64,000 nucleotides of DNA, taken from contig NC_091473.1 in assembly GCF_036971445.1 (NCBI RefSeq), positions 207,080,001 through 207,144,000 on the forward strand. Direction: 5' to 3'. Positions 24,123-56,084 of this stretch are shown here, in pieces. The number at the start of each line of letters is the position of its first letter. The first letter of the stretch is position 1. Origin of the DNA: Narcine bancroftii. Its lineage: Eukaryota. The notes under the pieces are model-generated. The model saw nothing but the letters and a program-made list of their open reading frames with translations. It did no database searches and was not told the origin of the DNA. The position numbers and the translations under genes are program-made.

Positions 24123-24978
24123 GCAGTGGTTCTCAACCTTTTTATTTTCACTCACATGGTATGTGATTAGGTGTTCTGTGATGAGAAAGGGATTGATTAA
24201 GGTGGTATGTGGATAGAAAGAAAAAGTTTGAAAACCACTGTATTAATCGTAACTAATTGACTTATTATGTGTATGGTTCCATTACTCCCTTGCCATTGAG
24301 GGAGTGCAAATAAGATTGACTAGTTTGATACCAGGGATGGCAGGACTTACATATGAAGAAAGGCTAGATTGACTAAGCTTATACTCGCTGGAATTTAGAA
24401 GATTGAGAGGGGATTTTATAGAAACGTATAGAATTCTAAGGGAATGCACAGGTTAGATGCAGAAGGTTGTTCCAAATGTTGGGGGAAACCAAAACCAGGG
24501 GTCACAGTTTAAGGATAAGAGTGAAGTCTTTTAGGACTGAGATAAGAATGAAAATTCTCTCAGAGCGTGGTGAATCTGTGCAATTCTCTGCCACATGAAG
24601 TAGTTGAAGCCAGGTCTTCATCTATATTTAGGAGGAAGATAGATTTGGCCCCAGTGGCTAAGGGGATCAGGAGATGTGGGGAGAAAGCAGGTATTGGGTA
24701 CTGAGTAGAAGATCAGCCATGATAAAAATGAGTGGTGGTGTAAATTAGAAGGGCCAAATGGTCTACTCCTGCACCAATCATCGATTTTTCTAAATTGTCA
24801 AAGGAAATGGGCCAATTACAATTTTTCTCAATCAAAATATTTCACTAACAATTACGTCTAGAGCCGTCCTTTACCCCTCACATACCATCTTAAGTAATCC
24901 CTATAATCATAGAGTAATTATGGCGTAGGTTTACTTAAAGTGGTATGTGAATGGAAAGAAAACGTTTGGGAACCACTG
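24123..24978. mobile_element. hAT (Charlie-like) MITE interrupted by a CR1 fragment (about 24289-24795)
   Basis: TIRs cagtggttctcaa / ggaaccactg; decayed 8-bp TSD atctaaag / gtctaatg. Confidence 0.75.
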
Positions 24979-26369
24979 GTCTAATGTATTCTCATCCTTT
25001 ATTCTACCTGTGTGCGTTCCTCTGTGAATAGCCTCAATGAAGTTATGTTTAGACCTAGAATAAAGCTAAAAATTAGTTGGAAAAGTCGAATTAATGAACA
25101 GTCAAAATGCACTTTTGCAGACGAATAGCAGGTCGTTGTCATGAAAACCAAATTGTAAAGATTAAGGGGATTGTTTGTGACCTCTCTGGAGTCTTCGAGG
25201 TAAGGTTTGATATCAGGGCACATTACCCAAACTTAAAGACGCGTTCAAACCCCCAAGTTACTAAAGTAAGGTGATAAAATAGTAATTACCTCCACGGTTT
25301 GTTTTTTTTTTACCCAGTACAGGACTCAGAGGAAGCCTCCCTGAGGTACAAATGGTTTGTACAATTTATACATTTCGACATTAAATATTTTATTGGACTT
25401 TTACGGAACTGTTCGTGATGATATTATTGCAGTTAATAGGAAAGTGAGAAATCAGGGGAAAGTCGCAGGGAAGCTGTAGTAGGAATGAATGGGCACTGGT
25501 AGTGCAAGATCCAAGACATGATCATAAAATGCTGGAACTTGCTCTGTCATCCGGCGCATGGCACCATCTTCTTTTCTCCTGTGCATCCCTCCCACACCAC
25601 CCCTGAAATTTGCAGGAAACCTATATTTTCTCATTCCTTCTTTGGAATGAATTTCAACCTGACATATTATCCATTTCCTCTGACCAGCTGGACGTCCCAC
25701 AATTCCGTTTTTCCGTGGGATTTATTTATGTTCTGAAAGATATGAGGTTCCAGAGTGGGCACAAAGGGGAAGTATGCCTTATGACATAGAAGGGGTTTTG
25801 TCAGACACCCGACATTCCACCGGCTCCCAGATTAACCAACTGATATAATCTGTAACTCATTCTTCGCTTATCACCAGCAACTCCATCTCCCGCCTTCACT
25901 GGCAACAGTTTCAATCAACAACTAACCTTGCGACCCGCACATCCTTGGGATGAGGGAGGAGATGAGAACACCCATAGGAGACCACATGACATTGGGAGGA
26001 ATATGCGAGTACGTGACTCCCAACAGAAAATGTATTGGTGACATTTTCACCCATGCTTTTCACTGGGAATCAAAGTTACAGGAAGAACTCTTAGACGAAT
26101 CACAATCACATAGAAAGGTGTTCAACGATAGCCTTTGAAGTGCATAAATAAATAATGTTTCTATCATTTCTTTTCTTTTAAGAAATTTGTCAATTCAGTG
26201 CCAGAATAGATCAGAATTTGAACTGGGGTCAAGGGAATTGGATATCAGTGAAAATGATTGAACATTATAGATTGATAGATTGAAGGATTTAATTGGGATT
26301 GCGGTTCAGAACCAAATGTAGCTATTGTAAAATCCGAAAGGTGTATTTGTAAGGGTGTCGGGCACTGTG

Positions 26370-26432
26370 TGAATTCTGGGGCCAGTAGAGGATTAATATT
26401 TGGAACGGGGACTCGACTCATTATCCAACCAA
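26370..26432 (+). CDS. TRAJ: TCR alpha J segment, cassette 1 type A (NSGASRGLIFGTGTRLIIQP)
   Basis: RSS tgtatttgt-12-cactgtg; FGTG; gtaagt. Confidence 0.95.
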
Positions 26433-26840
26433 GTAAGTGTTGAATAAGACTTTCAATTTTGCACCTCTTAATTCTAAATGCTAGATTTTAGCGAATGGCA
26501 TGAGATGTTACACCCGTCGACTAAATTGGAGAACAGAGCTTCTTACTTAAAACGCAATCTCCGTAAAATTAAGATAATATGAATTGTCCCCACTTTCAGA
26601 ATTGGTCTCAATATAGTTTTTTCTAGTCCTCAACCGTCTGTTGCGCACGTTAAACACAACTATTGACAAATATTAATACAGATGAAAGAAAGAATGATGT
26701 ATTTTACAGAGGATGAAATACACATGGGATTGAGAGATACAGGACATAAATATAAAAAATCAGTGTTTGTCTGTATGATTACCTTACAAAGCCAACATTA
26801 GATTGCCAAGGAATAGATTGCAAGAGGGTTAAGCACTGAC

Positions 26841-26901
26841 TAAATTATAGAAGCAGAATGTTTAATATTTTGAAATGGAACCAGACTGACTGTAAAACCC
26901 A
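26841..26901 (+). pseudogene. TRAJ: J-alpha pseudogene, cassette 1 type B (..LIF*NGTRLTVKP)
   Basis: Heptamer cactgac; in-frame tga; donor ctaaga. Confidence 0.85.
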
Positions 26902-27182
26902 CTAAGAGCAAACATTCCCAAGTTCATTGGTTTTCATCAGATATTGCATGAGTGGAACTCCGTGCTTATATTCCGAGGAAGTACATGATTGTGGGAAGCA
27001 ATCAATGTTGACATTTAAATAAATAATGTGTACAAGGTGAATATAAACTATGCTCACAATATATCAAACAAAATCACTCAATAGATGGTAGCATTGTTTT
27101 ATTTTTTTAATATATATGTAATTACAATGATGCAGAGGGTGCGGCCACTAGGCGAGTTCTTGTGAGGGGATCATTTGCAGTG

Positions 27183-27245
27183 TGAACGCTGCCGGGACCA
27201 ACAAATTAGTGCTTGGAAGCGGCACCAGATTTATTGTTAATCCTG
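27183..27245 (+). CDS. TRAJ: Non-canonical J-alpha ORF, cassette 1 type C (NAAGTNKLVLGSGTRFIVNP)
   Basis: RSS agttcttgt-12-tgcagtg; LGSG; gtaagt. Confidence 0.85.
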
Positions 27246-27943
27246 GTAAGTTATTGAAAGTTCAAACGAATTTTTTAAGAAATGTCTAAATTCTTATCAA
27301 CGTGCAATGCTGTGGGTAATGGACGTTACAGGTTTTCTGCTACATTTTCAATAGCATTCGTCCTACTGAGAAGTAAAAATAGCTGAAATCTCCCGGAAAT
27401 TATTCAACAATCAATTCCATGGTGAAGCTTTTAATTAATTAATTAATTCTTCCCAATGAACGTTTGTGAATGGTGGCAGATTTGAAAGAGGTCTGAGGGG
27501 CATATTTTTTACGCAAATGATGTTTGAACACTGAAATCTACTACCTGTGGGTTGACCGCAGCATAGAGTCCATCCGCATTCACAACATAAATTGGCAAAG
27601 CCCAACAATTCATAATTTTACTCATTTATTTTCCAAACATCCTATGTTTGGACGGTGGAGGTAATTTACAGACTCCAATCTTTTACCGGGGGTAGGGGAG
27701 TAATCTACCTGGTAAGGCAGTAGGAGCTGCTTTCCCAGAACATTATAGCCTGTGCTAGCAATTTAATCGTCAAAACAGAGAAGGCTGTGGACTAAGTCGT
27801 GGAAATTGTATTACGTAGATAGGTATCCTATGGGAAGCAGGACGGTGGTGGGCCTCAGGGGCCACACGAGTCCGTGATGAAATAACACATGTTGAACTTG
27901 GTGCCAGGTAAGAGTGTTTCTGGACTACTAATGCAATACCATG

Positions 27944-27999
27944 TGAATAACATCGATCCACTAGTATTTGGAACGGAACCAAATTACAGGTGGAACCTC
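27944..27999 (+). pseudogene. TRAJ: J-alpha pseudogene, cassette 1 type D (NNIDPLVFG, frameshift, GTKLQVEP)
   Basis: Heptamer taccatg, 13-bp spacer; 1-nt deletion inside FGTG. Confidence 0.85.
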
Positions 28000-28575
28000 G
28001 TAAGTCTGATTTATTATGTATTTTTGTATAGTACATCTCCAAATGCGGTTCTATCTTTCTCTTTCGGGTTGCTATCATTAAGACCTAATTTTAGACATTC
28101 AGACGAATTGGGTGCAAGAAGGAAATCCCGTAAAGTTTGTTCAGATGGAAAGTGAGGGAGGTGGCAAAACAAGGTATCGGAAGGTGCTTGTATTCAAACC
28201 AGTACATAAATGTGTTGAAGAAACTCAGTATCCATAAAACGCAACAAGGTTTCTTTTGAAGAAAGAATTTTGAGGACGGGTTCAGGCCTGAAAAGTCGAC
28301 TTCATTTTGCTCTCTATGGATACTGCACGACCAAATAACTTTGTCCAGCACTCATGTGTACCGCAAGGGAGGAATGGTCAGTTTGAGCATATCTGACAGC
28401 TTGAGATCCGAGGGGTAATCAAATAAATGAGAGACTGCAGACATCAGGCGATTAGCATTATTAGCATCATTCACTTGAGGATTTTTCTCACATTGCCACT
28501 GAAATTCGCCAAAGACCTGCCCGCATCTCCTACCCAATTCTGAGAAATCTTCCTAGACCTGAAACGTTAACTCGT

Positions 28576-28950
28576 TGGTTTTCAAACTGCCTCCCCCCAA
28601 ACTCAAATTCCTCCTTCAGCTATCCCTGTCCCATGAGTGCTCTGTTATTGATAAGGTATGGCTTAAGGTGGTATGTGGGTGGAAAGAAAGGGGTTTGAAA
28701 ACCACTGTTTTAATCATACCTAATTGACTTGTAATGTGCACGGTTTCACAACACCAAAGGAAATGAGCCAGTAACAATTTTTCTCAAGCAAAACTATTTC
28801 ATTAATAATTGGGTCTAGAGCAGTGGTTCTCAGCCTTTATTTCACACTCACATCCCGCCTTAAGTAATCTCTTACCAATCACTGAGCACTTACTTCATAG
28901 GGATTGATTAAGATGGAATATGAGTTTAGGGGGCAGATTGAAAACCACTG
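28576..28950. mobile_element. hAT MITE inside the cassette (paralogues about 33115-33452 and 37668-38040)
   Basis: Same two fold-back-unit structure ending ttgaaaaccactg. Confidence 0.7.
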
Positions 28951-29282
28951 CGTTTCTGATTCTATCTCCACACATGTTGTCCGGACTGAGTGTTTCTAGA
29001 ATACTGTTTTTCAGTAGAAATGTTTGCATGTTGAGAAGGATGTGAAGTTTGAGGGAGAGCGGAAGGGAGATATGTCTCCCCACAAGATGGGATGGGCCAC
29101 TTCTTCACCACGGATTTTTCACTGTAATCTATTCGCCCAATATCCCCAACAATTCCCAATCCTTCCTTGAGTGGGGAACGTTTACAGTGGAAGACTGACC
29201 TAGAAACCCACACATTCTTGAGATGTGATAGATGCTGGGAGCACCCGGAGAACTTATGTGACAGAGGAGGTAAATAATAGAG

Positions 29283-29627
29283 CAGTGTTTCCCAACCTTT
29301 TTCTTTCCACTCACATACCGCTTTAAGTATTCCCTATGCTATAAGTACTTTGTGATTAGTAAGTGATTACTTAGGATGGTTATATGGGTGGAAAGGAACA
29401 GTTTGAAAACCACTGCTTTAATCGTACATTTGACTCGTTATGTGCACGGTTTCATAACTCCAAAGGAAATGGACCAATGACTATTTTTATCAATCAAAAT
29501 ATTTCAATTACAAGTGAATCTAGATCAATGATTCTCAAACTTCCCTCACTTAAAAAATCCCTTACTAATCACAAAGCACTTATGGCATAGGGTTTACTCG
29601 AAGTGGCATGTAAGTGGATGGAAAAGG
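29283..29627. mobile_element. Hybrid hAT MITE at the cassette 1/2 junction
   Basis: Left flank taatagag, right flank gtctaagg (non-matching TSDs). Confidence 0.75.
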
Positions 29628-30929
29628 GTCTAAGGTATGCTCATCAGTTGTACCCCTGTGCGTTGCTCTGTAAAAAGCCTCAATTAGATCATATTTATAC
29701 CTCGATCCAGGCTAAAGATGAGTCTGGAAAAATTGGATTTATGGACATCAAAATGCACTTTTTGCGGATGCATAGCAGGTCGTTGTCAATAATGCCAAAT
29801 TGTAAAGATTAATAGCAAATAAGGGGATGGTTTGTGACCTCTCTGGAGACTTCGACGCAAGGTGTAACATGATGGTAAAATTGCTCAAACTTAAAGAAGC
29901 GATCAAAACCCCTAGTTATTAAAATAAGGTGGCAAATAGTAATTATCTCCGAAGTTTATTTACCAAGTACAGGACTCAGAGGAAGTCTCCCTGTCCAGAG
30001 ATTGGTTTGTAGAATTAACACATTTCGACATTAAATACTTTTGTTAGACGTTTACAGAATCGTTGATGATGATGTTATTGCAGGAAAGAGAAAGATAGAA
30101 ATCAGGTGAAAGTCGCAGGGAAGCTGGAGTAGGAATGAATGGGGGACACTGGTAGTGTGAGGTCCAAGACATAATTAAACTGCTGGAAACGCTCTGACAT
30201 CCGGCGCATGGCACCATCTTCATTTCTCCTGTGCATCCCTCCCAAACCACCCCTGAAACTTGCATTTTATCTTTCCGTCTTTGGAATAAATTTCAATTTG
30301 AGATGTTAACCGATTTTCTCTGACCAGCTGGGTGTTTCCAGAATTCTGTTTTTTTCCTTGTGATTTGTTTATGTTAGGAAAGATGTGAGATTCCAGAGAG
30401 GAAACAAAGGGGATTTGTTCCCTTATGATATAGAAGGAGCAGCCAGATTCACCACCTGATATAATCTGTAACTCATAGCACCAGCAACTCCATCTCCCAC
30501 CTTCACTGGCAACAGTTTACAGTCAACAACTAACCTCGCAACCCGCACATCATTCGGATGTGGACTCACATATGATCCCACATGACTTTGAGTGGACTAT
30601 GCGAGTACGTGACTCCCAACATAAAAAGTAGTGGGATTTTTTTTCACCCTTGCTTTTCACTGGGAATCAAAGTTACAGGAATAACTCTTAGACAAATCAC
30701 AATGAAATAGAAACGTGGTCAATGATTACATTCGAAGCGCATACATAAATAATATTCCTATTGTTTGGGTTAGTCTTTGAGCTGGGGTCAAGGGAAAATT
30801 ATTGAATCTAGATAGTAAAATGAGAAAAGATTGAAGAAATATTTAGATTCAATTGGCATTGTGGTTCAGAACCAAATGTGGCCATTGTTAAATCCAAGAA
30901 GTGTATTTGTAAGGGAGTCGATCACTGTG

Positions 30930-30992
30930 TGAATTCTGGAGCCAATTGGAGATTAATATTTGGAACCGGGACTCGACTGATTATCCAACCAA
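30930..30992 (+). CDS. TRAJ: TCR alpha J segment, cassette 2 type A (NSGANWRLIFGTGTRLIIQP)
   Basis: RSS tgtatttgt-12-cactgtg; FGTG; gtaagt. Confidence 0.95.
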
Positions 30993-31385
30993 GTAAGTGT
31001 TAGGAAAGTCTTTAAATTTTGCTGCTCTTAATTCTAAATGCTAGATTTTGGCGAATGCCATGGGATGTTATTCCAATCGACTAAATTGGAGAACAGAGCT
31101 TCTTACTTAACACGCAATTTCCATGTAATTCAGATAATAGGACTTCTCCCCACTTTCACAATTGGTCTCAAGTTTTTCTATTCCTAAACCACCTGTTCCA
31201 TGGGTTAAACAAACCTATAGACAAACATAAATACAGATGAAAGAAATATTAATGTGTTATACAGAAAATGAAATGCACGTGAGATTGAGAGATGCATGAC
31301 ATAAATATGATAATGGGTATGATTACCTCCCAAACCCAACCTTAGATTGCCAGGGAATAGCTTGAAAGGGGGGTTGAGCACTGAA

Positions 31386-31448
31386 TAAATTTTATAAAAG
31401 CAGAATATTTAATATTTGGAAATGTAACCAAACTGTCTGCAGAACACA
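31386..31448 (+). pseudogene. TRAJ: J-alpha pseudogene, cassette 2 type B (..LIFGNVTKLSAEH)
   Basis: Heptamer cactgaa (GTG lost); FGNV. Confidence 0.8.
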
Positions 31449-31742
31449 GTAAATGCAGATGTTCCCAAATTCATTGGTTTTCATTGGATATTGCAAGAGT
31501 GTGTGAAAGAGTGGAACTCCGTGCTTTTATTCCTAGGAAGTACATGATTGTGGGAAGCAGTCAACATTGAAATTTGAATAAATAATGTGTACAAGCTGAA
31601 CATAAACTAGTCTCTCAATTTATCAAACAAAATCACTCAATGAATGGTAGCATTGATTCATTTTTAAAAAATCATATGTAATTACAAAAATGCAGAGGGT
31701 GCAAACACTAGACGAGTTCTTGTGAGGGGATCATTTGCTGTG

Positions 31743-31805
31743 TGAATGCTGGTGGGACTGGCAAATTAGTATTTGGAAGTGGAAGCAGACTTCTTGTTAA
31801 TCCAG
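31743..31805 (+). CDS. TRAJ: TCR alpha J segment, cassette 2 type C (NAGGTGKLVFGSGSRLLVNP)
   Basis: RSS agttcttgt-12-tgctgtg; FGSG; gtaagt. Confidence 0.95.
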
Positions 31806-32524
31806 GTAAGTTATTGAAGTTTCAAACAAAGTTTTCAAGCAAATGCTAAATTCTTATCAACGTGACATGCTGTGGGTAATGGACGTTACAGGTTTTCCGC
31901 TGCATTTTCAGTAGCATTGGTCCTACTCAGAAGTGAAAACAACTGAAGTCTCGCGGATCTGATTCACCAATCAATTCTATGGTGAACCTTTAAATGAAAT
32001 AATTTGCTCTTCATAACATATTTATGTGAATCGTGACAGATTTAACAGATATCTGAGGGGAGTCTCTTTTACGCAAATGATGTTTGGCCCCTGAAACATA
32101 CCTCCTGTGGGTTAATCGTGACAGAGATTCTATCCTCATTCACAACATGAATTGGCAAACCCCCACAACTCATATCTTCACTCATCCTACAGAAGTGCCA
32201 TTTATTTTCCAAACATCCTATAGCTACACGCTAGAGGCAATTTACGGACTCTTTTACGTAGGGTGTAGGGGTTGGGGGTAATCTACCTGGTAAAGCGGTA
32301 TAAGCTGCTTTCCCAGAACATATATAACATGCCTTGGCTAGCATTTCAATCGTCAAGGCAGAGAAGGCTATGGACTCAGTGTTGAAAATTGTATTATGTA
32401 GATAGTTATCCTATGAGGAGCAGGACGGTGTTGGGCCTGAGTGACCACATGTGTCTGTGATACAGTAACGCAGGTGCATTTGGGGCCAGTTAAGGGGGTT
32501 TCTGCACTACTATGCAATACTGTG

Positions 32525-32581
32525 TGAATAGCATTGATGCCCTAGTATTTGGAACTGGAACCAAATTACGGTTGGAACCTC
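32525..32581 (+). CDS. TRAJ: TCR alpha J segment, cassette 2 type D (NSIDALVFGTGTKLRLEP)
   Basis: RSS ggtttctgc-12-tactgtg; FGTG; gtaagt. Confidence 0.93.
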
Positions 32582-33776
32582 GTAAGTCCGATTAATTATG
32601 TATTTTTCAATAGCACATCCTTAAATGATGTTCCATCTTTCTCTATCGGGTCGTTATCATTAAAGCCTAATTATAGACATTCGGACGAAATGGTGTCAAG
32701 AAAGAAATCCCGGTACAATTACTGAGATAGAAAGGGAGGGAGGGTGGATAAACAAGATGTCTGAAGGTGCTCGGTATCCAGAGAACGCAAAAGGTTTTCC
32801 TTTTGAAGGAATTCTGAGGACGAGTTCAGGCTTGAAACGCCGATTTCCTTTTGCTTTCTCTGGATGCTGCGCGACCCGATGGGTTTCCCTAGCATGTATG
32901 TGTACGACAAGGGAGGAGAGGTCAGTTTGAGCATATCTGGAAGCATGAGATCCAAGAGGTAATCAAATAAATGATGGAACGCAGACGTCTGGCGAATAGT
33001 ATCATCTTCTCATTCACCTGAGGTTTCCTCTCACATTGCCACTGAAACTCGTCAACACCTGACCCATTCTCCTACCTAATTCTGATAAGTCTTCCTAGAC
33101 CTGAAACGTTAACTCCCTCCAAACTCACATTCCACTTTAAGCAATCCCTGTATCATAAGTGCTATGTGATTAATAAGGGATTGCTTAAGGTGGTATGTGG
33201 GTGGAAAGAAAGGGGTTTGAAAACCACTGTTTTAATCATACCCAATTTACTCCTTGTGTGCACGATTTCATAACTCCAAAGGAAATGAACGAGTAACAAT
33301 TTTTCTCAAGCAAAAATATTTCATTAACAATTGGGCCAAGACAAGTGGTTCTCAACCTTTTGTTCACACTCACACAACACCAAAGGTAATCACTTACTTA
33401 CGTCATAGGGATTGCTTAAAGTGGAATGTGAGTTTAAGGGAGAGTTTGACAACTATCTCCACACATGTTGTCCGGACTGCTGACTGCTTCCAGAATACTG
33501 TTTATAAGTAGAAATGTTTGTAGGTTGAGAAGGATGTGAAGTTTGAGGGAGAGCGGAAGGGAGATATGTCTCCCCACAAGATGAGATGGGCCACTTCTTC
33601 ACCACGGATTTTTCACTGTAATCTATTCGCCCAATATCCCCAACAATTCCCAATCCTTCCTTGAGTGGGGAACGTTTACAGTGGAAGACTGACCTAGAAA
33701 CCCACACATTCTTGAGATGTGATAGATGCTGGGAGCACCCGGAGAACTTATGTGACAGAGGAGGTAAATAATAGAG

Positions 33777-34135
33777 CAGTGTTTCCCAACCTTTTTCTTT
33801 CCACTCACATACCGCTTTAAGTATTCCCTATGCTATAAGTACTTTGTGATTAGTAAGTGATTACTTAGGATAGTTATATGGGTGGAAAGGAACAGTTTGA
33901 AAACCACTGCTTTAATCGTACAATTGACTCGTTATGTGCACGGTTTTATAACTCCAAAGGAAATGGACCAATGACAATTTTTATCAATCAAACTATTTCA
34001 ATTACAATTGGATCAAGAGCAGTGATTCTCAAACTTTCCTTACTTTAGCAATCCATTACTAAACACAAAGCACTTATCGCAGATGGTTTACTTAAAGTGG
34101 CATGAGAATGAATACAAAAAGTTTCAGAACCACTG
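33777..34135. mobile_element. Hybrid hAT MITE at the cassette 2/3 junction
   Basis: Left flank taatagag, right flank gtcgaacg. Confidence 0.75.
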
Positions 34136-35539
34136 GTCGAACGCATGCTCATCAGTTTTGTACCCCTGTGCGTTGCTCTGTAATTAGCCTCAATTAGATC
34201 ATGTTTAGACCTCGATCCAGGCAAAAGATGAGTGTGGAAAAATTGGATTTATGGACATCAAAATACACTTTTGCAAATACATAGCAGGTCATTGACATTA
34301 ATACCAAATTATAAAGATTAACACCGATTAAGGGGATGGTTTGTGACCTCTCTGGAGACTTCGATACAAGATTTGAAATGATGGCAAAATTACCCAAACT
34401 TAAAGACTCGTTCAAAACCCTTAGATATTAAAATAAGGTGGTAAATAGTCATTAACTCCGCGGATAATTTACCCAGTACAAGATTCAGAGGAAGCCTCCC
34501 TACCCAGAGATTGGTTTGTAGAATTTATACTTTTCGACATTAAATACTTTTGTTAGACGTTTACAGAATTGTTGATGATGATGTTATTGCAGGAAAGAGA
34601 AAGGGAGAAATTAGGGGAAAGTCGAAGGGAAGATCGAGTATGAATGACTGGTCACACTGGTAGTGCGAGATCCAAAACATGATCATAAAATTCTGGTACC
34701 TTTCTGACATCCGGCGCATGGCGCCATCTTCTTTCCTCCTGCGCATCTCTCCCACACCACCCCTGAAATTCGCAGGAAACCTGTATTTTTTATTTCCTTC
34801 TTTGGAATAAATTTCAATATGAGGTCTTAACCGATTTTCTCTGGCCAGCTGGGTGTTTCCACAGTTCTGTTTTTCCGTGGGATTTATTTATAAGTTAGGA
34901 AAGATGTGAGGTTCCAGAGTGGGCACTAAAGGGAATTATTGCCTTATGACACAGAAGAGGGTCTGTCAGCTACCGACACTCCACCCGCTTCTGGATTCAC
35001 CCAATGATATGATCTATAACTCATTCTTCGCATATCACCAGCAACACCATCTCCTGCCTTCACTGGCAACAGTTTACAATCACCAATTAACCTCGCGTTC
35101 ACACATCATTCAGATGAGGGAAGCGACGAGAACACCCATAGGAGCCCATATGACATTGGGGGAAATAAACAAATATGTGACGGCCAACAAAAAATGGAGA
35201 TTATTTGTTCACCCATGAATTTACCTGGGAATCAAAGTTACAGGAAGAATTCTTTGACGAACATAATCACATAGAAAAGTGTTCAATGATTACCTCTGCA
35301 GCAATTAAATAAATAATCTTTCTGTTGTTTCTTTTTTTTAAAGAAGGAATGTTGTTTGACAATTAAGTGCCAGAATTGGTCAGAATTTGAGATGGGGTCA
35401 AGGGAAAACGATTGAAATATAGAGAATAAAATGAAAAATGTTAGAAGAAAATTTAGATTTAATTGGCATTGCGGTTCAGAGCCAAATGTGGCCATTGTTA
35501 AATCTGAGAGGTCTATTTGTAAGGGTGTCGGGCACTGTG

Positions 35540-35602
35540 TGAATTCTGGATCCAATTGGGAATTCATATTTGGAACCGGGACTCGACTAATTATCCAATC
35601 AA
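35540..35602 (+). CDS. TRAJ: TCR alpha J segment, cassette 3 type A (NSGSNWEFIFGTGTRLIIQS)
   Basis: RSS tctatttgt-12-cactgtg; FGTG; gtaagt. Confidence 0.93.
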
Positions 35603-36006
35603 GTAAGTGTTGTAAAAGACTTTCAATTTTGCAGCTCATAATTCTAAATGCTAGTATTTAGCGAATGGCATGACATGTTCTGCCTGTTTACTAAATAGGA
35701 GAACAGAACATCTTACTTAACACGCAATCTCCGTAAAATTCATATAATGGGAATTGTCCCCACTTTCACATTGGTCTCAATTTTTTTTCTAGTGCTGAAC
35801 CATCTGTTGCGCAAGTTCAACAAAGTGATAGACCAACATAAATACAGTTGAAAGAAAGATTAATGTATTATACAGAGGATGGAATGCACATGAGATTGAG
35901 AAACATATTACATAAATTTGAAAAATTAGTTTCTGTCTGTATGATAACTTCACAAAGCCAACGTTAAATTGCTGGGGAGTAGATTACAAGAGGTTTGCAC
36001 ACTGAA

Positions 36007-36055
36007 TAAATTATAGAAGCATATGGAAATGGAACCAGACTGACTGCAGAACCCA
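36007..36055 (+). pseudogene. TRAJ: J-alpha pseudogene, cassette 3 type B (..YGNGTRLTAEP)
   Basis: Heptamer cactgaa; internal deletion removes LIF. Confidence 0.8.
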
Positions 36056-36348
36056 GTAAGTGCGGACGTTCCCAAATACGATGGTTTTCATCGGATATTG
36101 CAAGAATATGTGAAGGAGTGTAACTCTGTGCCTATATTTCGAGGACGTACATGATTGTGGGAAGCACTCATCATTGTCATTTGAATGAATAATGTCTACA
36201 AGGTGAACATAAACTATTCTCACAATTTATCAAACAATATCACTCAATGGATGGTAGTATTGCTTTCATTTTAAAATAAATACATAATTACAAAAATGCA
36301 GAGGGTTTGGACATTAAACGAGTTCTTTTGAGGGGACCATTTGCTTTG

Positions 36349-36410
36349 TGAATGATGGAAGTATCAGTAAATTAGTCTTTGGAAACGGCACTAACTTATT
36401 GTTAGTCCTG
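36349..36410 (+). pseudogene. TRAJ: J-alpha pseudogene, cassette 3 type C (NDGSISKLVFGNGTN, frameshift)
   Basis: Heptamer tgctttg; 1-nt deletion after FGNG puts the donor out of phase. Confidence 0.85.
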
Positions 36411-37019
36411 GTAATTTGTTGAAAGTTCAAACGAAGTTTTAAAGCAAATACTAAATTCTTAGCATCGTGGGTAATGGACGTAATTAAGTCTCCCAGAACT
36501 GATTCACCAATCAAATCCATGGTGAACTGTTAAATAAAATAATTCACTCTTCATAACGAACATATGTGAATGGTGACGGATTTAGAAGAGATCTGATAGG
36601 TATCTCTTTTACCCTAATTATGTCCATCCGCATTCAAAACATGAATTGCCAATTCATAATTTCACTCATCCTACAGAAGTCCCATTTATTTTCCAAACAT
36701 TTTATTTTCTACGACTCAGCTAAAAACTAGAGGTATTAACGGACTTGTTTAACCCGGAGGGGAGAGGTTTTAATCCACCTGGTAAGGCGATGGGAGCTGA
36801 TTCATCAAAACATTTACCAAGTGCCTTGGATAACACTTGAATCGCCAAGGCTGAGAAAGCTATGGACTCAGAGCTGGAAATTGTATTACCGTAGATAGGA
36901 ATACCGATGGGAAGCAGGACGGTGTTGGGCTTGAGGGACCATACGACTCCGCGATGCAATAACACATGTTGAATTTGGGGCCAGGTAAGGGGGTTTCTGC
37001 ACTACTATGCAATACTGTG

Positions 37020-37076
37020 TGAATAACCTTGATACGTTAGTATTTGGAACTGGAACCAAATTGCAGGTGAAACCTC
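37020..37076 (+). CDS. TRAJ: TCR alpha J segment, cassette 3 type D (NNLDTLVFGTGTKLQVKP)
   Basis: RSS ggtttctgc-12-tactgtg; FGTG; gtaagt. Confidence 0.93.
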
Positions 37077-38377
37077 GTAAGTCCGATTTATATATATCTT
37101 TCTATAGTACATATCTAAAGTTGTTCTATCTTTCGCTATCGAGTTGCTAGCATTAAAGCCTAAATTTAGAAATTCGGACGAATTGGGAGAAAGAGAGAAA
37201 TCCCGTTAGAGTTGCTGAGAGGTAAAGTGAGGGAGCTAAAGTGGCTAAACAAGATGTCTGAAGGTGCTGGTATCCAGTCCAGTACATAATCGTGTTAAGG
37301 AAACTCAGCAGGTCATTCAATATCCAGAGAACGGAGAAGGCTTTCCTTTTGATGAAGGATTTTGAAGAAGGGCTCAGGTCTGAAACGTCGCCTTCCTTTT
37401 GCTTTCTATGGTTGCCGCGATACCCAATGGGTTTCCCTAGCACTTATGTGTATGACAAGGGAGTAAAGGTCAGTTTGAGCGTATCTGGCAGCATGCGAAC
37501 TGAGAGGTAATCAAATAAATGATGGAACGCAGACGTCTGGCGAATAGCATCATCTTCTCATTCACCTGAGGATTCTTCTCACATTGCCACTGAAACTCGC
37601 CGAATACCTGACCTATTCTCCTATCTAATTCTGAGAGGTCTTCCTAGACCTGAAACGTTAACTCCGAGGTTTTCAAACTGCCTCCCCCAAACTCAAATTC
37701 CACCTGAAGCAATCCCTGTGCTATAAGTGCTCTGTGATTAATAAGGGATTGCTTAAGGTTGTATGAGAGTGGAAGGAAAAGGGTTCGAAAAACACTGTTT
37801 TAATCATACCTAATTGACTTCTTGTGTGCACGGTTTCATAACTCCAAAAGAAATGAGTCAGTAACAATTTTTATCAAGCAAAAATATTTCATTAACAATT
37901 GGGCGAAGACAAGTGGTTCTCAACCTTTTGTTCACACTCACACATCACCTTACGTAATCCCTCACCAATCACAGAGCACTTGTGTCGTAGGGATTGATTA
38001 AGGTGGAATGTGAGTTTAGGGGGCAGTTTGAAAACCATTGAGTTAACTGATTCTATCTTCATACATTTTGTCCGGCCTGCTGATTGTTTCCAGAATACTG
38101 TTTTTCAGTGGAAATATTTGCAGGTTGAGAAGGATGTGAAGATTTGAGGGAGAGCGGGAGGGAGATATCTCTCCCCACAAGATGGAATGGGTCATCTCTT
38201 CACCACGAATTTTCTCAATATAATCCATTTTCCCAATATCCCCAACATTCCAAATCCTGCCTTTAGTGGAGAACGTTTACAGTGGCAAACTGACCCAGTG
38301 GCCCTCACATCCATGAGATGTTATAGATGCTGGGAGCACCCGGTGAACCCATGTGACAGAGGGGGTGAATAATAGAG

Positions 38378-38734
38378 CAGTGGCTTTTATCCTTTTTCTT
38401 CCTACTCACAAACCACTTTAAGTATTCCCTATGCCATAGGGACTTTAAGATTTGTAAAGGATTGGTTAAGGATGGTTGTGTGGGTGGAAAGAAAAAGGTT
38501 GAAAGCCACTATTTTAATCGTACTTAATTGACTCGTTATGTGCATGGTTTCATAACTCCAAAGGAAATAGCCCAATGACAATTTTTATCAAGCAAAATAT
38601 TTCAGTAACAATTGGGTCCAGAGCAGTGATTCTCAACCTTTTGACTCACATATCACCTTAATCACAGAGCACCGATGGCATAGGGATTACTTAAAATGGT
38701 ATGTGAGTGGAAAGAAAAAGGTTGAGATCCACTG
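38378..38734. mobile_element. Complete ~357-bp hAT MITE with perfect 8-bp TSD
   Basis: TAATAGAG at 38370-38377 and 38735-38742; cagtgg...ccactg termini. Confidence 0.85.
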
Positions 38735-49775: not shown

Positions 49776-50365
49776 TTTTAAAAGTAGAATTACATCTAAT
49801 TCCATCATCTTATCTGGCAGATTTGCATATATTAACCACTCTCTGTCCAAGAAACATAATCTTTAGGTGTAATTTAAAACTTATTTCTCACACCTCCACC
49901 AGATGCCTTCGACTTTTTGACGGCTCTCCCATGTCGAAACCGCTTTGCATCTTCCCTCTCCACACCTTAAATAGAGTCATAGAGCACGGAATAGGCCCTT
50001 CAGCCCAACTCGTTTAAGTAAAACAAGTCGTAATTCCGGGTCAATCTCATCTTCCTATGTTTTATCTGCAATTTTACCGCCCATTCCTACACATATAATC
50101 TTCTTCGCTTTTATTGGGTCACCCCTCAGGCTTATTCGTGCAGCGAAAACAAGCGAAGGTTCGGGGGTGAGTCGTTTTTTATGGCCTGTGTATGTGGTAT
50201 ATTTCTTCCATTATTATTGTAGGGGGAGGATAAAGTATTTGCCTGTTCAGATGATGGCCAGAGGGTTAAATTATCATCCCTCCTGTCAATCGCTCATGGG
50301 TTCCCTGGAAGCTGCGCAAAGCAGGACAGCAATGAGCTCACCCTCTGCCTTTCTTTCCTCCGTAG

Positions 50366-50662
50366 AAGGGGATGAATCATTGAAGCCGTCCCTCTATGTC
50401 CTCCGGCCATCTCCGTCTAAAAGCAATGACCAGGAGACCGATACCTCGGCGGCCTGCCTCGCCACCGAATACTTCTCCAACAAATACAATCTCAAAGTGA
50501 CCATCGGAGATGCCAGCAAGCAGAAGAGCAAAAAGGAGGCTTTGATCTCCATCAAGCACAAGACTTTCAATCTGTTCAGTTTCCTGTCTGTCCCCCGGTC
50601 TCAGATAATGAAAAGCATCTCATGTCAGCTCGAAACTCCGGGGGAAATAAAGAACGTCGAAG
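50366..50662 (+). CDS. TRAC: TCR alpha constant region exon 1 (Ig C domain)
   Basis: Pyrimidine tract plus cgtag acceptor, phase 1 matching the J donors; 297 nt encoding GDESLKPSLYVLRPS..AACLATEYF..SISCQLETPGEIKNVE with two Cys; donor gtaggt. Confidence 0.93.
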
Positions 50663-50889
50663 GTAGGTCGATTGTTTTATCACTGAAACTCCGTTTAACC
50701 GGCACCCTCGGGTCTCTGATTATGCCGGAATGATTCGTTCTGGACTATCGGGTATTTCGTATTAATGTGTCACTGAATCTTAAAGGTAATATTTCGGCGA
50801 ACTTCGCGAGTTTCAAGGGAGGGATCCCAGCAGAAATAGGTGCCTTTAGAGAGCGCGGAGAAGCCCAGGGCCCCACTGACTGCTTTGTT

Positions 50890-51135
50890 TTTACATTTAG
50901 ATTTGCAGCACGTCAACAGGTCCTTACGGCCCACGAACCCGGGCCGCCCAAATACCCCAATTAATATACGACCCCTTGTAGTTTTTGAAAGGTGACAGGA
51001 AACCGGAGGACCCGGAGGAAACCCACTCAGTCATGTGGAAAACGTACAAACTCCTTACAGACAATCCTGTATTTGAACGTGTCACTGGCGCGGTAGCAAC
51101 GTGGCGCAAACTGCTACGCTAACCGTGCCGCCCTA
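50890..51135 (-). mobile_element. tRNA-derived V-SINE (HE1-like) in C-alpha intron 1
   Basis: Reverse complement of the V-domain: aggaaaccggag..ggaggaaaccca..gtacaaactcc. Confidence 0.75.
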
Positions 51136-51840
51136 ACCCTGATGGGACACAGTGGGGACTGGAGCAGCAGTTCTCGCTAGAATTGGAAGCCCCATGAGTG
51201 AAAATTGTCAACATCACTCGCTGAGCTGGACACGAAACTATGAAGACTTCCGAATGGTCAGAAACCAAATTATCGGTATTCTATTGACAATCACCGCCAA
51301 CCCCGCCACGCCCCCACAGAGAAATTGCCCAAAAAGAATTGGCTGTTTCTGAGCTCACAAGAGACAGCCGTGACAGTCACCTCAATTCTGTTTCGCCCTT
51401 AATCATCACGCTCCCATAAAACACCTTTGCTTCAGTGACTCCCTGCATCTCACTGGAGAAATATCCCTATCTTCTCAGTATTTTATCCTATCAGTTAATG
51501 TGAATGCAGCAGTAGATAATAGAGAGGTAGGTGAGTTACTTCCTGCGGTTGCTGAGACGAGAACGCGGGGGGCATTACCTCAAGGTACATGACAGAAGAT
51601 TTAGGATGGAGAAGGCTCTTCCCAGAGAGTGTTGAATCTATGGAATTTTCTGCCTCAGTGAACATTAGATACATTTTTTCATCAGGAAAATTAATGGATA
51701 TGGAGGAAAAGCGTGTAGCTGGAGGTGAACCTGTCATCAGATAGGCCATGATCTTAATGAATGGCGGAGCACTGTCAACAGGCTGTATGGCCTACTCCAC
51801 CTCATATTACTTATGTTTTTAAGTTTTTCCCCATATCGCC

Positions 51841-52300
51841 AAGCTGTCCCAGACCAACCCGCTCATCCCCGACAGTCTCAGACTGTCCCAGATCAACTTG
51901 CTCATTCCAACCACAATTAGTCTCGGACCAACCTGTTCACTCCAACCACAATCTGTCCCAGACCAATCTGTTCATCTCAACCCCAGTCTATCCTGGACCA
52001 ATGTGCTCACTTTCCCAACCCCAGTTGGTACGGACCATCCTGTTCAACCTCTGCAGCCTTAGTCTGTCCCGGGATAACCTGCTCACCGCTCCAAGCTTGT
52101 CACAGACCGAACTCCTCATCCACTCCCACCCCATCTCAGCGAGCATTGACCCAATATCAGTTTCTCCCAGACCAACTTGCTCATTCTCCGACACCAGTGT
52201 TTTCCCAAAAGAACATGCTCATCCCTCAACCCCAGCCTATCCCGGATCACTCGGTGCATCCTTATCAATCCCGGTGAGTGTTGACCTAACCTGCTTAGCT
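51841..52300 (+). repeat. Degenerate ~33-37 bp tandem repeat (ccccagtctgtcccagaccaacctgctcatc..)
   Basis: About 12 diverged units upstream of C-alpha exon 2. Confidence 0.85.
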
Positions 52301-52387
52301 GGCGACAGCAATAGGCTTCTCTGTATATCAAATTAGAGTGAAGTTTTTGACAGTTATCTACATGGTGTTTGTTTTGACCTTTTTCAG

Positions 52388-52435
52388 AAGATGACCCGGT
52401 GTCTTGCATTCAACTTCCAGAAAGCAATGAAGATG
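52388..52435 (+). CDS. TRAC: TCR alpha constant region exon 2 (connecting peptide with presumed interchain Cys)
   Basis: ttttcag acceptor; EDDPVSCIQLPESNED; gtgagt donor; 48 nt, phase 1-1. Confidence 0.88.
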
Positions 52436-52589
52436 GTGAGTTATTGCCTTGCACACTGGTTGGCAATCTTTACGCTGTCATGAGTTTAGATAATAGTCTC
52501 TACAACCACCTGCATAATGCATGCAGGGTCGAACTATCAAGCGCCAGCTTGACTTATAGCCTGAGAATCTGAAGTAGAAAACTTGGAAG

Positions 52590-53095
52590 AATGAGCTGGT
52601 TAGTCCAAGGCAAACTGGGGTCGTGGGTAGATGATCAGGTTTGTGCAGGACAGGATGGAATTCGGTAGGTGAAGGGTGGGCTGGGATTATGTGATGAGCA
52701 GATTGGTTTGGGACAGGCTGGGATTGTGAGGGGTGATTGGGTTGTAGCGGGTCGGTAAAGGGGGGTGTTGTAGGGTGAGCAGGTTGATCTGAGGCAGGCC
52801 GAAGTTGTGGGGAATGAGCATCTTGGGCCGCAACAAACTGAGAATTGGGGCATGAGGCATTCAGGGCAACATTCATTAGGATAGGGGATGATCTGAATGG
52901 ACTGGAGTTGGAGTGGAGGGATTTGTGGGTTGGTCTTGGACAGTGGGATAGGGTTGAGCAGTTTGGACCGAGGCAGACTGGGTCAGGAAATGAACAGTTG
53001 GGCTAGGAAGGACTGAGGCGTGAGGTGAGCGGGTCGGTCTGGGACAAGCCTACCATGGGGAGAAAGTTGGTCCAGGACAGATTAGGTTTGGGGGA
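52590..53095 (-). repeat. Same ~35 bp tandem repeat in inverted orientation
   Basis: Units read gatgagcaggttggtctgggacagactgggg on +, the reverse complement of 51841-52300. Confidence 0.85.
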
Positions 53096-53406
53096 TTTGG
53101 AGGATTACCAGATTGAGTCACCAGACACTGTAATTAGGAAAGATAATTTTCGTGAAAAGTGGAGGCTGAACGGTATTGTGATAAGACCGGATTTCTCCTT
53201 GCCTGGCGCAGAGATGAACCTCTGTATCTCACACCAGTGGACTCAACATATTGGTGGCCGGGATGGTGGCGGGTGATTAGTCTGCAGGCTGGGGACTGGT
53301 TGGGGCCCAAATTATAATATCGGCCCAGCCTGATTTTACAGCCTTGTTGAACCCGTTGCTTTTTCTCAGGTTCTGAACGTCTGAATATTGTTTCTTTCCC
53401 GAGTAG

Positions 53407-53513
53407 GAGAACATGAGCGAGGTATCTCACTCACAGTTTTTGGACTGAGGATTCTGTTCTTCAAAAGCGTCGTCTTCAACGGTTTGATGACAGTACGAGC
53501 CTGGGTATCATAA
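53407..53513 (+). CDS. TRAC: TCR alpha constant region exon 3 (TM and cytoplasmic tail)
   Basis: GEHERGISLTVFGLRILFFKSVVFNGLMTVRAWVS*; conserved TM Arg, Lys and Asn; donor gtaagg just after the stop, as in TRAC. Confidence 0.95.
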
Positions 53514-53951
53514 GGTAAGGGCCAACACCGTTTGGAGGAGGCCGAACAACCTCCGATGATGGCGCGGAAACCCAAGCCCGCGCCACAGTGAAGAACTGAT
53601 GTGGTACAAAGGACAAAATTAAAGTGAACAACACTGCCCATTTCCGCAGCACGGCTCTCCTCGGCACCACACCTCTCGCAGGAGGGCGCTCTCACAGCGC
53701 TAACTTTCCCGTTGCGCGGTGCCCCCACCATCTGCGCCGACAGCATGCGGTGGCGAGAGAGAAAGCCGCCGTCAGAGCTTTCCAGTAGATACAGTAGCGA
53801 CTTGAATACATTGGGCTAAATGACCAAATTATACACTCTTCTCGATTCCCATAGTCACTGGCCTGACGTTCCCTAGCCGTGATTAGTTTGAGCGGGGAAA
53901 GGCAAGAATCCGTGAGAAATCTGAACTCTTCCTTCTCTACCCAATTACTAG

Positions 53952-54120
53952 ACGGAGACAGGACCAGGAGGCCAGTCGACTACCCGCAAACCCTGGCGCT
54001 GAATCCGGGCCGAACCCTCATCTGGGAAGAAATTGTACAGATATTGAAGAACGTGTACAGCCAATCGGATCAAGGGTTAATTTTTACCCTTTTAATAAAC
54101 ACCGGCCCTCTCGCATTTGG
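53952..54120 (+). other. TRAC: Putative C-alpha exon 4 (3' UTR) with polyA signal AATAAA at 54094-54099
   Basis: Pyrimidine tract and tag acceptor ending at 53951, then AATAAA; matches the untranslated fourth exon of TRAC. Later AATAAA sites near 54949 and 55171 are alternatives. Confidence 0.55.
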
Positions 54121-56084
54121 CGATCTCTATCATTTGTATCCTCTCCTTTGAAATTCTGCTGACATTTTCTGAACCGACGTGTGTATTACAGTTGCATACT
54201 TGTGAGAATGTGAATTTATCATCTTTACGTTGTTATTGTCTCTGTGTGTAAATGGCTCTTGTAATGCAAATGTTCCTTGCCCTGAGACTGCTCCTTGTTC
54301 GCGCGATATCACCACAAGGAGGTCATTCGGCCTTTTGAGTCTGTGCCAGTTCACGAATCTTTTTGCCACCCTTTCCAATCTCCGGCTGGTCCTTTTTTTC
54401 AATAATTCGCTTTCAGTTCACGCCCCTTTCTCCTCCCTGCCAGCGGGACCATCCCTTCCTCATTCGCAACCTGCAGCAACACCGTCTCCATTCAATCTTC
54501 CCTTCCCGCTCTCCGCTTTCTCGGGACATCCTGCGTCCCCAGGGCAGCTCCAAGCAAGTATTTAGGTTGACAAGCCTTTAAATGTATATGCCGGGGAGAA
54601 TAATCTCAAATTCCCAATAGCAAATCCTAAATGGGTCAAACTGCATCATAAATGCAGCGAATAACCTGGAATTTGGATGCTAGAAACACCACAAATAATA
54701 TTAATTAAACGGTTCAATTTGATTTTTTTATTAAAAAACTACATCCAGTTACTAATGCCCCGGCCTATATGTAACTCCATTCCAGCGGTTGACACTTTAA
54801 ACGAGTCCATTTCGCCACTCAGTCGTGGGCGATGACTTGGTGGGGCTTTAAAAGGGGCCCACGGCGTCCAGATTAAAGGGCCTTCCCCTTCCTTAACCCC
54901 CCCCCCACCAACATTTCTCCAAGATGGAGACCCGGCGACAAGATATAAAATAAAAGCGTCCAATGGGCATCGTCAGGGAATTGTGCAAAGCAATCTGCCT
55001 TCTCATTCACTCTCTTGTCCAACCGATGTAAATACTGTATACAAAGGTTAATGCGAAGCAATGCCGCTTCAGAATATCGGATATGGCATTTCATTGTAAC
55101 TATCATCTGGGTTTCAACTGTGATTTTGTTGTATTTTTTTAAACTTTCCATTTGTTTTGCAATATTTTCCAATAAAGTCTCTGATGATATGATTTAGCTC
55201 TCCTGGGACTCATTTCTTTCCGTCTACCGATGCATTGCCTGCGACAGAGACATTATGGGGGGGTGGGATTGGTGGTGATTTCAACGCTTGACATGCCACA
55301 ATCTAGTCACCGTGACCCAGAAACACTCCAATTTGCCTGGTGCTGGAGCTCTCACTGGGTGTGACCTTTTTGGCCGATGCTCTTGGTCACCTCCGTTACT
55401 TATTGTGTGGCAAAAACACAAAACTCGTCAGGTTTGGATTAGAAATGCAGAGTTACTTAGGCCATACAGTGCACTTCAAGCAACAAGAAGGTAGCGGAGA
55501 GTGTAGTAACACATCTTTTTGTTCAAAACGGGATTGTCAGCTCACAGTCCTCGAAATAACAAGGCATGTTACTAGAAAGCTAAGTAAGATAAAATCCTGA
55601 GTCATGAGGCCTTGAAACATGCAGACCAAATTAAAACGTAAGAGAAGGTAACATGATGAGATAAATTTGCTTTTGGGAACAAGTGAAATTGTTTCTGTTA
55701 ACTTTTTAACAGTCTTTCATTAAGACATTTTTACATTTAAGAGTTGTGTAGATTAGGAAAGAAGCGTGGGCTCTTTCATTTATATGTGTGAATAGTGAGC
55801 AAGTTCGCTGTTCTTGAGATCAGTGCCTAGGACCTCTGAGACTCCACGCCAGCCATTGGAAACCGGAATCCACAAGGAGCGAAGAACGTGAAACTTGCTC
55901 TTTTACTGTATCTTGGACATTGTTTTGTTAATATTCTGTGTAGGTTACTAAATGTCTTTTTTTTTTGCACTTTTGAAGTTGATCTGCAACCTCGAATGTC
56001 TGCTTGTTTTTATCTTGTTACGAAGGGGATTCAGAAAGGATCATGGAGATATTATCAAAGAAGATTGCATACTTCCTCGTGTTA

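What the first reader, a model, noticed from the sequence alone, without database searches (positions are those of the whole stretch)
51841..53095. Inverted satellite arrays form a potential fold-back around the cysteine-bearing C-alpha hinge exon
Seen: about 450 bp of a ~35-bp repeat in intron 1 (e.g. 51844 ctgtcccagaccaacccgctcatc) and about 500 bp of its reverse complement in intron 2 (e.g. 53024 ggtgagcgggtcggtctgggaca; 52693 gatgagcagattggtttgggacag). Their midpoint (about 52445-52470) sits at the 3' edge of exon 2 (52388-52435). I see this repeat nowhere else in the window. Exon 2 is 48 nt and phase 1-1, so skipping it is in frame and removes the hinge Cys. Established: complementary intronic flanks loop out exons and promote skipping, back-splicing and ADAR editing. 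Inference: this could be an RNA-structure switch that yields a hinge-less, non-disulfide-linked TCR alpha or a C-alpha circRNA.
Basis: partly seen in the sequence, partly recalled or inferred. Interest (0 to 1): 0.78.

Follow-up and report, generated by a model that had tools for sequence, protein, structure and literature searches.

The report
Inverted repeats flanking TCR-alpha hinge exon
Two worn-down copies of one 35-base repeat lie in opposite directions on either side of the small hinge exon of a ray's T-cell-receptor alpha gene and could pair in the RNA, but every spliced transcript seen keeps the exon, so this is more likely a leftover than a splicing switch.

Summary
A decayed ~35-bp repeat fills 51844-52270 (C-rich, intron 1). 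Its reverse complement fills 52580-53095 (G-rich, intron 2). The two arrays bracket the 48-nt, Cys-bearing exon 2 of a cartilaginous-fish TCR alpha constant gene, and the repeat occurs nowhere else in the window.

In silico the arrays form a long imperfect fold-back: 280 pairs, MFE -515.6 kcal/mol, and -259.8 with one array flipped. With array 2 shuffled the MFE is still -444, so most of the stability comes from C-rich against G-rich composition. No uninterrupted helix exceeds 13 bp. Units are only about 60% alike, within and between arrays, with no colinear signal, so the arrays are old.

In 3 of 3 RNA-holding runs the only spliced contig is exon 1-2-3-4. No exon 1-to-3 joint and no back-splice appear, and 0 of 4 array differences are A>G. 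Contigs hide rare forms, so low-level skipping is not excluded. The arrays draw no extra contigs at 80% likeness, so this is not a common satellite.

Verdict: a real structure whose switch function is unsupported, most likely a neutral remnant.

The parts
50366..50662 (+). C-alpha exon 1 (297 nt, Ig C1-set domain)
   Evidence: Pfam C1-set, E 1.4e-4, 22.6 bits against a cut-off of 21. Translation. RNA contigs start at 50366 and join 50662 to 52388. 41-47% identical to ray and shark TCR-alpha-like proteins.
51844..52270 (+). Array 1: about 12 decayed units of a ~35-bp repeat, C-rich, in intron 1
   Evidence: C 0.39 / G 0.14. An independent-sample contig, X5 51608-52309, has 1 difference.
52388..52435 (+). 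Exon 2: 48 nt, phase 1-1, hinge / connecting peptide with the interchain Cys
   Evidence: Translation DDPVSCIQLPESNED. Joints 50662>52388 and 52435>53407 in 3 of 3 RNA-holding runs. Splice sites read.
52580..53095 (-). Array 2: about 14 decayed units of the same repeat in reverse complement, G-rich on the transcript, in intron 2
   Evidence: G 0.42 / C 0.12. X5 contig 52521-53153 has 3 differences and X6 contig 52917-53075 has none.
51845..51865 (+). Best-kept unit core; pairs with 53026-53046 (21 nt, 95% complementary)
   Evidence: pair I10. The local alignment 51821-51966 against 53068-52930 is 107/136 identical, score 71, against a shuffle maximum of 27.
53407..53514 (+). Exon 3: transmembrane segment and stop (53511-53513)
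   Evidence: Translation. All 22 PDB sequence hits are TCR alpha or delta chains, the best being the TCR alpha C region, E 6.6e-4. Joint 53514>53952.
53952..55192 (+). Exon 4: 3' untranslated region
   Evidence: RNA contigs run from about 53950 to 55064-55192. AATAAA is read at 55171-55176.

Best explanation
These are two remnants of one old ~35-bp minisatellite. They lie in opposite orientation in intron 1 and intron 2 of the TCR alpha constant gene of a cartilaginous fish (a probable ray), 117 nt before and 144 nt after the 48-nt hinge exon. Shown: both are transcribed within the pre-mRNA and removed with the introns. Predicted only: the C-rich upstream array can pair with the G-rich downstream array into a long, bulged fold-back that loops out exon 2. 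Inferred: this pairing has little or no effect on splicing. Exon 2 has a GTGAGT donor and a long pyrimidine tract, lies well away from both arrays, and is included in every spliced contig seen. The arrangement is therefore most likely a neutral by-product of an old inverted duplication, or of two insertions of the same repeat, that has since decayed. It is probably not a switch.
For: Arrays and orientation. Old and decayed: mean unit identity is 0.63 within array 1, 0.58 within array 2 and 0.60 between them, with no colinear diagonal, and TRF scores only 127 bp. Constitutive inclusion: X5, X6 and X7 each have one high-depth contig (427, 227, 357) with joints exon 1>2>3>4 and no other joint touching these exons. 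No editing signature: the 4 differences in the array contigs are G>A, C>A, A>T and G>A. All 4 break a predicted pair and none is compensated; the MFE goes from -515.6 to -504.3. Fold-back is largely composition: native MFE -515.6, 20 dinucleotide shuffles of array 2 give -444.3 +/- 10.3 and still 217 cross pairs, and flipped array 2 gives -259.8 with 0 cross pairs. The longest uninterrupted helix is 13 bp. Splice sites: ATG|GTGAGT donor and a T-rich acceptor tract. In the Alu model system, putting 68 nt or more between the repeat and the exon restored constitutive splicing (PMC2533698, section 11 read). Other inverted repeats of 30-106 nt are common in this window: 10 of the 13 pairs lie in the J region.
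Against: The residual sequence-specific complementarity is real: z = -6.9 for the whole fold and -372.9 against -287.3 +/- 10.1 for the duplex alone. In the ensemble, 65% of array 1 is paired to array 2 with P > 0.5. The arrays sit almost symmetrically around a short in-frame exon, and reviews give patches of 30-40 nt as enough to promote circularisation (PMC5814467, passage). The RNA evidence comes from contigs only, from unknown tissues, and contigs drop rare isoforms. Conservation in other species was not tested.
Confidence: 0.6

Rival explanations
1. One reading: the fold-back is a working RNA-structure switch. When the arrays pair, exon 2 is looped out and skipped in a minority of transcripts or in a particular cell state. 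This would give a TCR alpha chain without the hinge Cys, or an exon-containing lariat or circle.
For: The predicted fold-back has 280 array-to-array pairs and 341 pairs enclosing exon 2, and is stronger than the shuffles at z -6.9. Skipping is in frame. The repeat is unique to these two sites in the window and draws no other contigs at 80% likeness. The arrays lie at near-equal distances from the exon, as is said to be needed (PMC5814467, passage). Inverted Alus can shift an exon from constitutive to alternative (PMC2533698, abstract).
Against: No exon 1-to-3 joint, no back-splice and no A>G differences appear in 3 of 3 RNA-holding runs (contigs only). Helices are at most 13 bp. Two thirds of the energy is compositional. 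The arrays lie 117 and 144 nt from the exon, whereas the Alu effect vanished once 68 nt were added to a native distance of 24 nt. The 4 polymorphisms all break pairs without compensation. All 5 homologues read keep the Cys. A 48-nt single-exon circle would be far shorter than typical single-exon circRNAs (recalled, not from a call).
Confidence: 0.12
2. The arrays act through composition rather than pairing. The many G-runs downstream (hnRNP H/F-type intronic enhancers) and the C-rich tract upstream (PCBP/PTB-type binding) help the spliceosome define a very short exon.
For: There are 27 GGG runs in array 2 and 17 CCC runs in array 1. The strong, mirror-image GC skew changes sign at the exon. 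The exon is only 48 nt yet is fully included. That G-run intronic enhancers exist is recalled, not from a call.
Against: No protein binding was tested. By my reading, the first GGG after the donor lies about 90 nt downstream and the array starts at +144. The exon's own splice sites already look strong. The mirror-image composition follows directly from one repeat lying in two orientations, so it needs no selection.
Confidence: 0.12
3. The role is at the DNA level: the arrays are the arms of a foldback-type mobile element, or a regulatory, R-loop or recombination-prone structure in the TCR alpha locus.
For: Inverted arms built of tandem sub-repeats are the hallmark of foldback elements (recalled). 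One canonical G4 motif lies at 52710-52741, and the G-rich non-template strand is in array 2.
Against: The segment between the arms holds an old host exon shared with the ray and shark homologues. No other copies were laid at 80% likeness in a low-coverage DNA run or in three RNA-holding runs, while true mobile-element pieces nearby pile up to depth 33,798. The arms are only about 60-79% alike, too diverged for a cruciform. I did not look for target-site duplications in a formal way.
Confidence: 0.05

Closest known systems
Inverted intronic Alu pairs that alter splicing or promote circRNAs in primates (Lev-Maor et al. 2008, PMC2533698; review PMC5814467)
   Same: Reverse-complementary repeats in the introns on both sides of an exon, at similar distances, are predicted to pair in the pre-mRNA and loop the exon out.
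   Different: The arms are decayed local minisatellite arrays, not dispersed SINEs. Pairing is poorer: helices are at most 13 bp and the best long stretch is 79% identical. They lie further from the exon (117 and 144 nt). Neither the defining outputs (skipping, back-splice, A-to-I editing) nor any other sign of function was seen.
Human TRGC2, the TCR gamma constant gene whose exon 2 lacks the interchain Cys (PMC7349638, passage read)
   Same: It shows that a TCR chain without the hinge Cys, and hence a receptor that is not disulfide-linked, exists in nature and is encoded at the level of the small connecting-region exon.
   Different: In TRGC2 the Cys is lost by germline sequence change and exon duplication, not by alternative splicing, and the chain is gamma, not alpha. 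No Cys-less alpha transcript was seen here.
Foldback-type transposons with arms made of tandem sub-repeats (recalled, not from a call)
   Same: Two inverted arms, each an array of short tandem units.
   Different: A conserved host exon sits between the arms, no other copies were detected, and no ends or target-site duplication were identified.

Membership tests
TCR alpha constant gene | Ig C1-set domain exon followed by a short Cys-bearing connecting exon and a transmembrane exon with conserved basic residues, spliced in that order | tested here: met
   Pfam C1-set. Cys in exon 2. The transmembrane exon hits only TCR alpha or delta chains in the PDB, 22 of 22. Spliced exon 1-2-3-4 contigs. The nearest proteins are named TCR-alpha-chain-like in Hemitrygon and Chiloscyllium. 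Alpha rather than delta rests partly on unchecked notes that J-alpha segments and a C-delta cassette lie upstream.
Complementary-flank exon looping / circRNA locus | Reverse-complementary sequence in both flanking introns | tested here: met
   13 inverted pairs join the arrays. 280 predicted pairs. z -6.9 against shuffles.
Complementary-flank exon looping / circRNA locus | Good complementarity over patches of 30-40 nt or more | tested here: inconclusive
   60 nt at 72%, 37 nt at 81%, 26 nt at 85% and 21 nt at 95%. Longest uninterrupted helix 13 bp.
Complementary-flank exon looping / circRNA locus | Back-splice junction or exon-skipped junction in RNA | tested here: not met
   No such joint in X5, X6 or X7. 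The only joints at these exons are exon 1>2, 2>3 and 3>4. These are contigs, so rare forms could be missed.
Complementary-flank exon looping / circRNA locus | A-to-I (A>G) editing clustered in the arms | tested here: not met
   0 of 4 differences in the array contigs are A>G. Contig consensus only, and no DNA from the same individual.
Tandem satellite / minisatellite | Head-to-tail units of constant period | tested here: met
   TRF gives period 35, 2.8-3.1 copies, at 51885-52011. HMM units are spaced 33-40 nt across both arrays. Heavily decayed, with mean identity about 0.6.
Genome-wide dispersed satellite or mobile-element family | Many copies elsewhere in the genome | tested here: not met
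   None elsewhere in the 64-kb window. At 80% likeness the array bins hold only the locus's own contig, or nothing, in four runs, while neighbouring mobile-element pieces reach depths of 4,272-33,798. Copies less than 80% alike would be missed, and no whole-genome search was possible.
Foldback-type transposon | Defined element ends with target-site duplication, and multiple genomic copies | tested here: inconclusive
   No extra copies. Ends and duplications were not formally searched. A host exon lies between the arms.

The most novel reading that the evidence does not exclude
In particular T-cell stages or tissues, the C-rich and G-rich arrays pair co-transcriptionally and loop out the 48-nt hinge exon. 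A small, regulated share of TCR alpha mRNA would then encode a chain without the interchain Cys and with a much shortened connecting peptide. That would be an alpha-chain counterpart, made by RNA structure, of the non-disulfide-linked gamma-delta receptor.
Probability: 0.07. Interest if true: 0.6.

Novelty: new member of a known kind. Interest (0 to 1): 0.27.

Why it matters
If the fold-back did control exon 2, it would be the first case of an antigen-receptor chain whose interchain disulfide is switched by RNA structure, and it would sit in an early-branching vertebrate lineage. As things stand, the locus is a clean example of two things. First, an inverted pair of one skewed repeat produces a very large predicted fold-back energy mostly through composition. 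Second, such a structure can sit around a constitutively spliced micro-exon without visible effect. It also gives an RNA-confirmed four-exon model of this ray's C-alpha gene.

Tried and rejected
Recent colinear palindrome: rejected. The unit-by-unit identity matrix has no diagonal (offset means 0.58-0.62), and identity between the arrays equals identity within them.

Arrays as the tail of the mobile element that ends just upstream (51462-51835): rejected. Its best match to intron 2 scores 22, against a shuffle mean of 19.8 and maximum of 28. Other copies of that element laid by the reads do not continue into the array (loose end at 51771).

Structured RNA gene in the introns: no Rfam match at E up to 1 in 50300-55300.

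Coding repeat: the 191-aa ORF at 51761-52336 runs through the C-rich array, where stop codons are rare. The period of 35 is not a multiple of 3 and the stretch is intronic in all spliced contigs, so I treat it as an artefact.

Word-indexed protein search with exon 1 found nothing. The index-free search found 9 proteins.

A PDB search with homologue P0002 gave only generic antibody C-domain hits and so did not discriminate.

Earlier-findings look-ups by sequence and by words were blank.

Literature: three searches (TCR alpha exon 2 skipping; shark TCR alpha genomic organisation; cartilaginous-fish TCR splice variants) listed no title on a hinge-less TCR alpha isoform. I saw only listings and abstract starts for these, and supplements were not opened. 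One further search on the species named by earlier notes (listing only) added nothing.

The joined (spliced) protein or mRNA model was not built or searched. Exons were handled one at a time.

Full report
What is there.

The region is the constant gene of a T-cell-receptor alpha chain. Exon 1 (50366-50662) encodes an Ig C1-set domain (Pfam; translation). Exon 2 (52388-52435, 48 nt) reads DDPVSCIQLPESNED. Exon 3 (53407-53514) encodes a transmembrane segment ending in a stop. Its only sequence relatives among solved structures are TCR alpha and delta chains: 22 of 22 hits, the best being the TCR alpha C region. An index-free search with exon 1 found 9 proteins. The three best are 41-47% identical, and two of them sit in clusters with RefSeq proteins named TCR-alpha-chain-like from a stingray and from bamboo sharks. 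All 5 homologues I read keep the hinge Cys. Unchecked earlier notes place J-alpha segments upstream in this window and a C-delta cassette 71.5 kb before it, and call the animal an electric ray. I did not verify the species.

The observation.

Of the 15 inverted pairs found in 51000-54000, 13 join 51844-52270 to 52580-53095. A 21-nt core motif hits 8 times in the window, 5 on + in array 1 and 3 on - in array 2, against 0.02 expected by chance. A unit HMM finds 10 + 10 units inside the arrays and only chance-level hits (E of 1.9 or more) outside them; 8 of the 20 array hits were its own seeds. Base composition and GC skew are mirror images and change sign at exon 2. The arrays are not an assembly artefact. 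Contigs from other samples cover 51608-52309 with 1 difference, 52521-53153 with 3, and 52917-53075 with none.

The arrays are, however, badly decayed. TRF scores only 51885-52011. Mean unit identity is 0.63 within array 1, 0.58 within array 2 and 0.60 between them, with no colinear diagonal. That argues for an old event and against a recent palindrome or ongoing homogenisation. The outermost 146 nt are the best-kept stretch, 107 of 136 aligned columns identical.

Can it fold?

Yes, in silico. The minimum-free-energy structure of 51800-53150 is -515.6 kcal/mol, with 468 pairs. Of these, 280 join the arrays and 341 enclose exon 2. In the ensemble about 276 array-to-array pairs are expected.

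The controls qualify this. With array 2 flipped the energy falls to -259.8 and there are no cross pairs. With array 2 dinucleotide-shuffled (20 times) it is still -444.3 +/- 10.3, with 217 cross pairs on average. About two thirds of the long-range gain is therefore C-rich sequence meeting G-rich sequence. The sequence-specific remainder is significant (z -6.9; duplex alone -372.9 against -287.3 +/- 10.1) but smaller. The longest uninterrupted helix is 13 bp.

Does it do anything?

One call laid four runs on 50300-55250 at 80% likeness. X5, X6 and X7 are labelled only as possible RNA, but each holds a contig with GT..AG introns removed, so they contain RNA. In all three the single high-depth contig (427, 227, 357) runs exon 1>2>3>4. 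No joint from exon 1 to exon 3 and no backward joint at exon 2 is listed. The only backward joint lies in a mobile element.

Low-depth contigs (about 7, roughly 1.7% of exon depth) cover both arrays in X5, as expected for pre-mRNA. Their 4 differences from the window are G>A, C>A, A>T and G>A, so none is A>G. All 4 fall on predicted pairs and break them without compensation. This is a tiny sample, but it gives no hint that pairing is preserved.

The tool warns that contigs drop rare variants. These results show that inclusion is the dominant form; they do not show that skipping never happens.

Is it a common repeat?

At 80% likeness the array bins hold only the locus's own contig, or nothing, in all four runs. 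These include a low-coverage DNA run, X9, whose unique pieces differ from the window at 0-1 positions despite its different organism label. Mobile-element pieces at 50964-51129 and 51628-51793 pile up to depths of 4,272-33,798 and 139-767. The repeat is therefore not a high-copy family at that threshold. More diverged copies would escape, and no genome-wide search was possible.

Context that bears on mechanism.

Exon 2 has an ATG|GTGAGT donor and a long T-rich acceptor tract. The arrays end 117 nt before it and begin 144 nt after it. In the Alu model, adding 68 nt or more between the repeat and the exon (native distance 24 nt) restored constitutive splicing (PMC2533698, abstract and section 11 read). 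A review states that 30-40 nt patches at equal distances can suffice for circularisation (PMC5814467, passages). Here the patches of that length are only 72-81% complementary. Inverted repeats of 30-106 nt are frequent elsewhere in this window: 10 of the 13 pairs lie in the J region.

Verdict.

The structure is real and unusual in form: two arrays of one local minisatellite, mirror-placed around a micro-exon. Every functional read-out available here is negative or neutral.

I put 0.6 on a neutral remnant that may fold transiently without consequence. The rest is unassigned.

It belongs to the known class of complementary intronic flanks, as a new and so far silent member. Supplementary files of the papers were not opened and could hold distance or length thresholds that bear on the comparison.

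Noticed in passing
window 50964-51129: A very high-copy element piece in intron 1. Summed contig depth reaches 33,798 (X5), 8,419 (X6), 21,723 (X7) and 4,272 (X9), with hundreds of loose ends whose consensus looks tRNA-derived. It is probably a SINE that is also abundant in RNA.
   Followed up: partly
window 51462-51835: The 3' end of another dispersed element (depth 90-767) stops a few bases before array 1. Its similarity to array 2 is at chance level, so the adjacency looks coincidental.
   Followed up: yes
window 53952-55192: The C-alpha 3' UTR exon starts at 53952, not further downstream. RNA contigs show a CCC insertion after 54896, a 1-nt deletion at 54007, and substitutions at 54148 and 54761 relative to the window. 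These are probably alleles.
   Followed up: no
window 24871-38734: Ten of the window's 13 inverted-repeat pairs of 30 nt or more (74-90% complementary, 27-916 nt apart) lie in the J-segment region.
   Followed up: no
window 52710-52741: The only canonical four-run G-quadruplex motif in array 2. Array 2 holds 27 GGG runs in all.
   Followed up: no
run X9 laid on window 52451-54445: The run is labelled as a different organism (B), yet its five unique-sequence pieces differ from the window at 0-1 positions. It is the same species or a very close one, so it is no cross-species comparator.
   Followed up: partly
window 50368-50661: The C-alpha Ig domain is at most 47% identical to any of 1.84 billion representative proteins, and the word-indexed search found nothing. 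The domain evolves fast in cartilaginous fish.
   Followed up: partly
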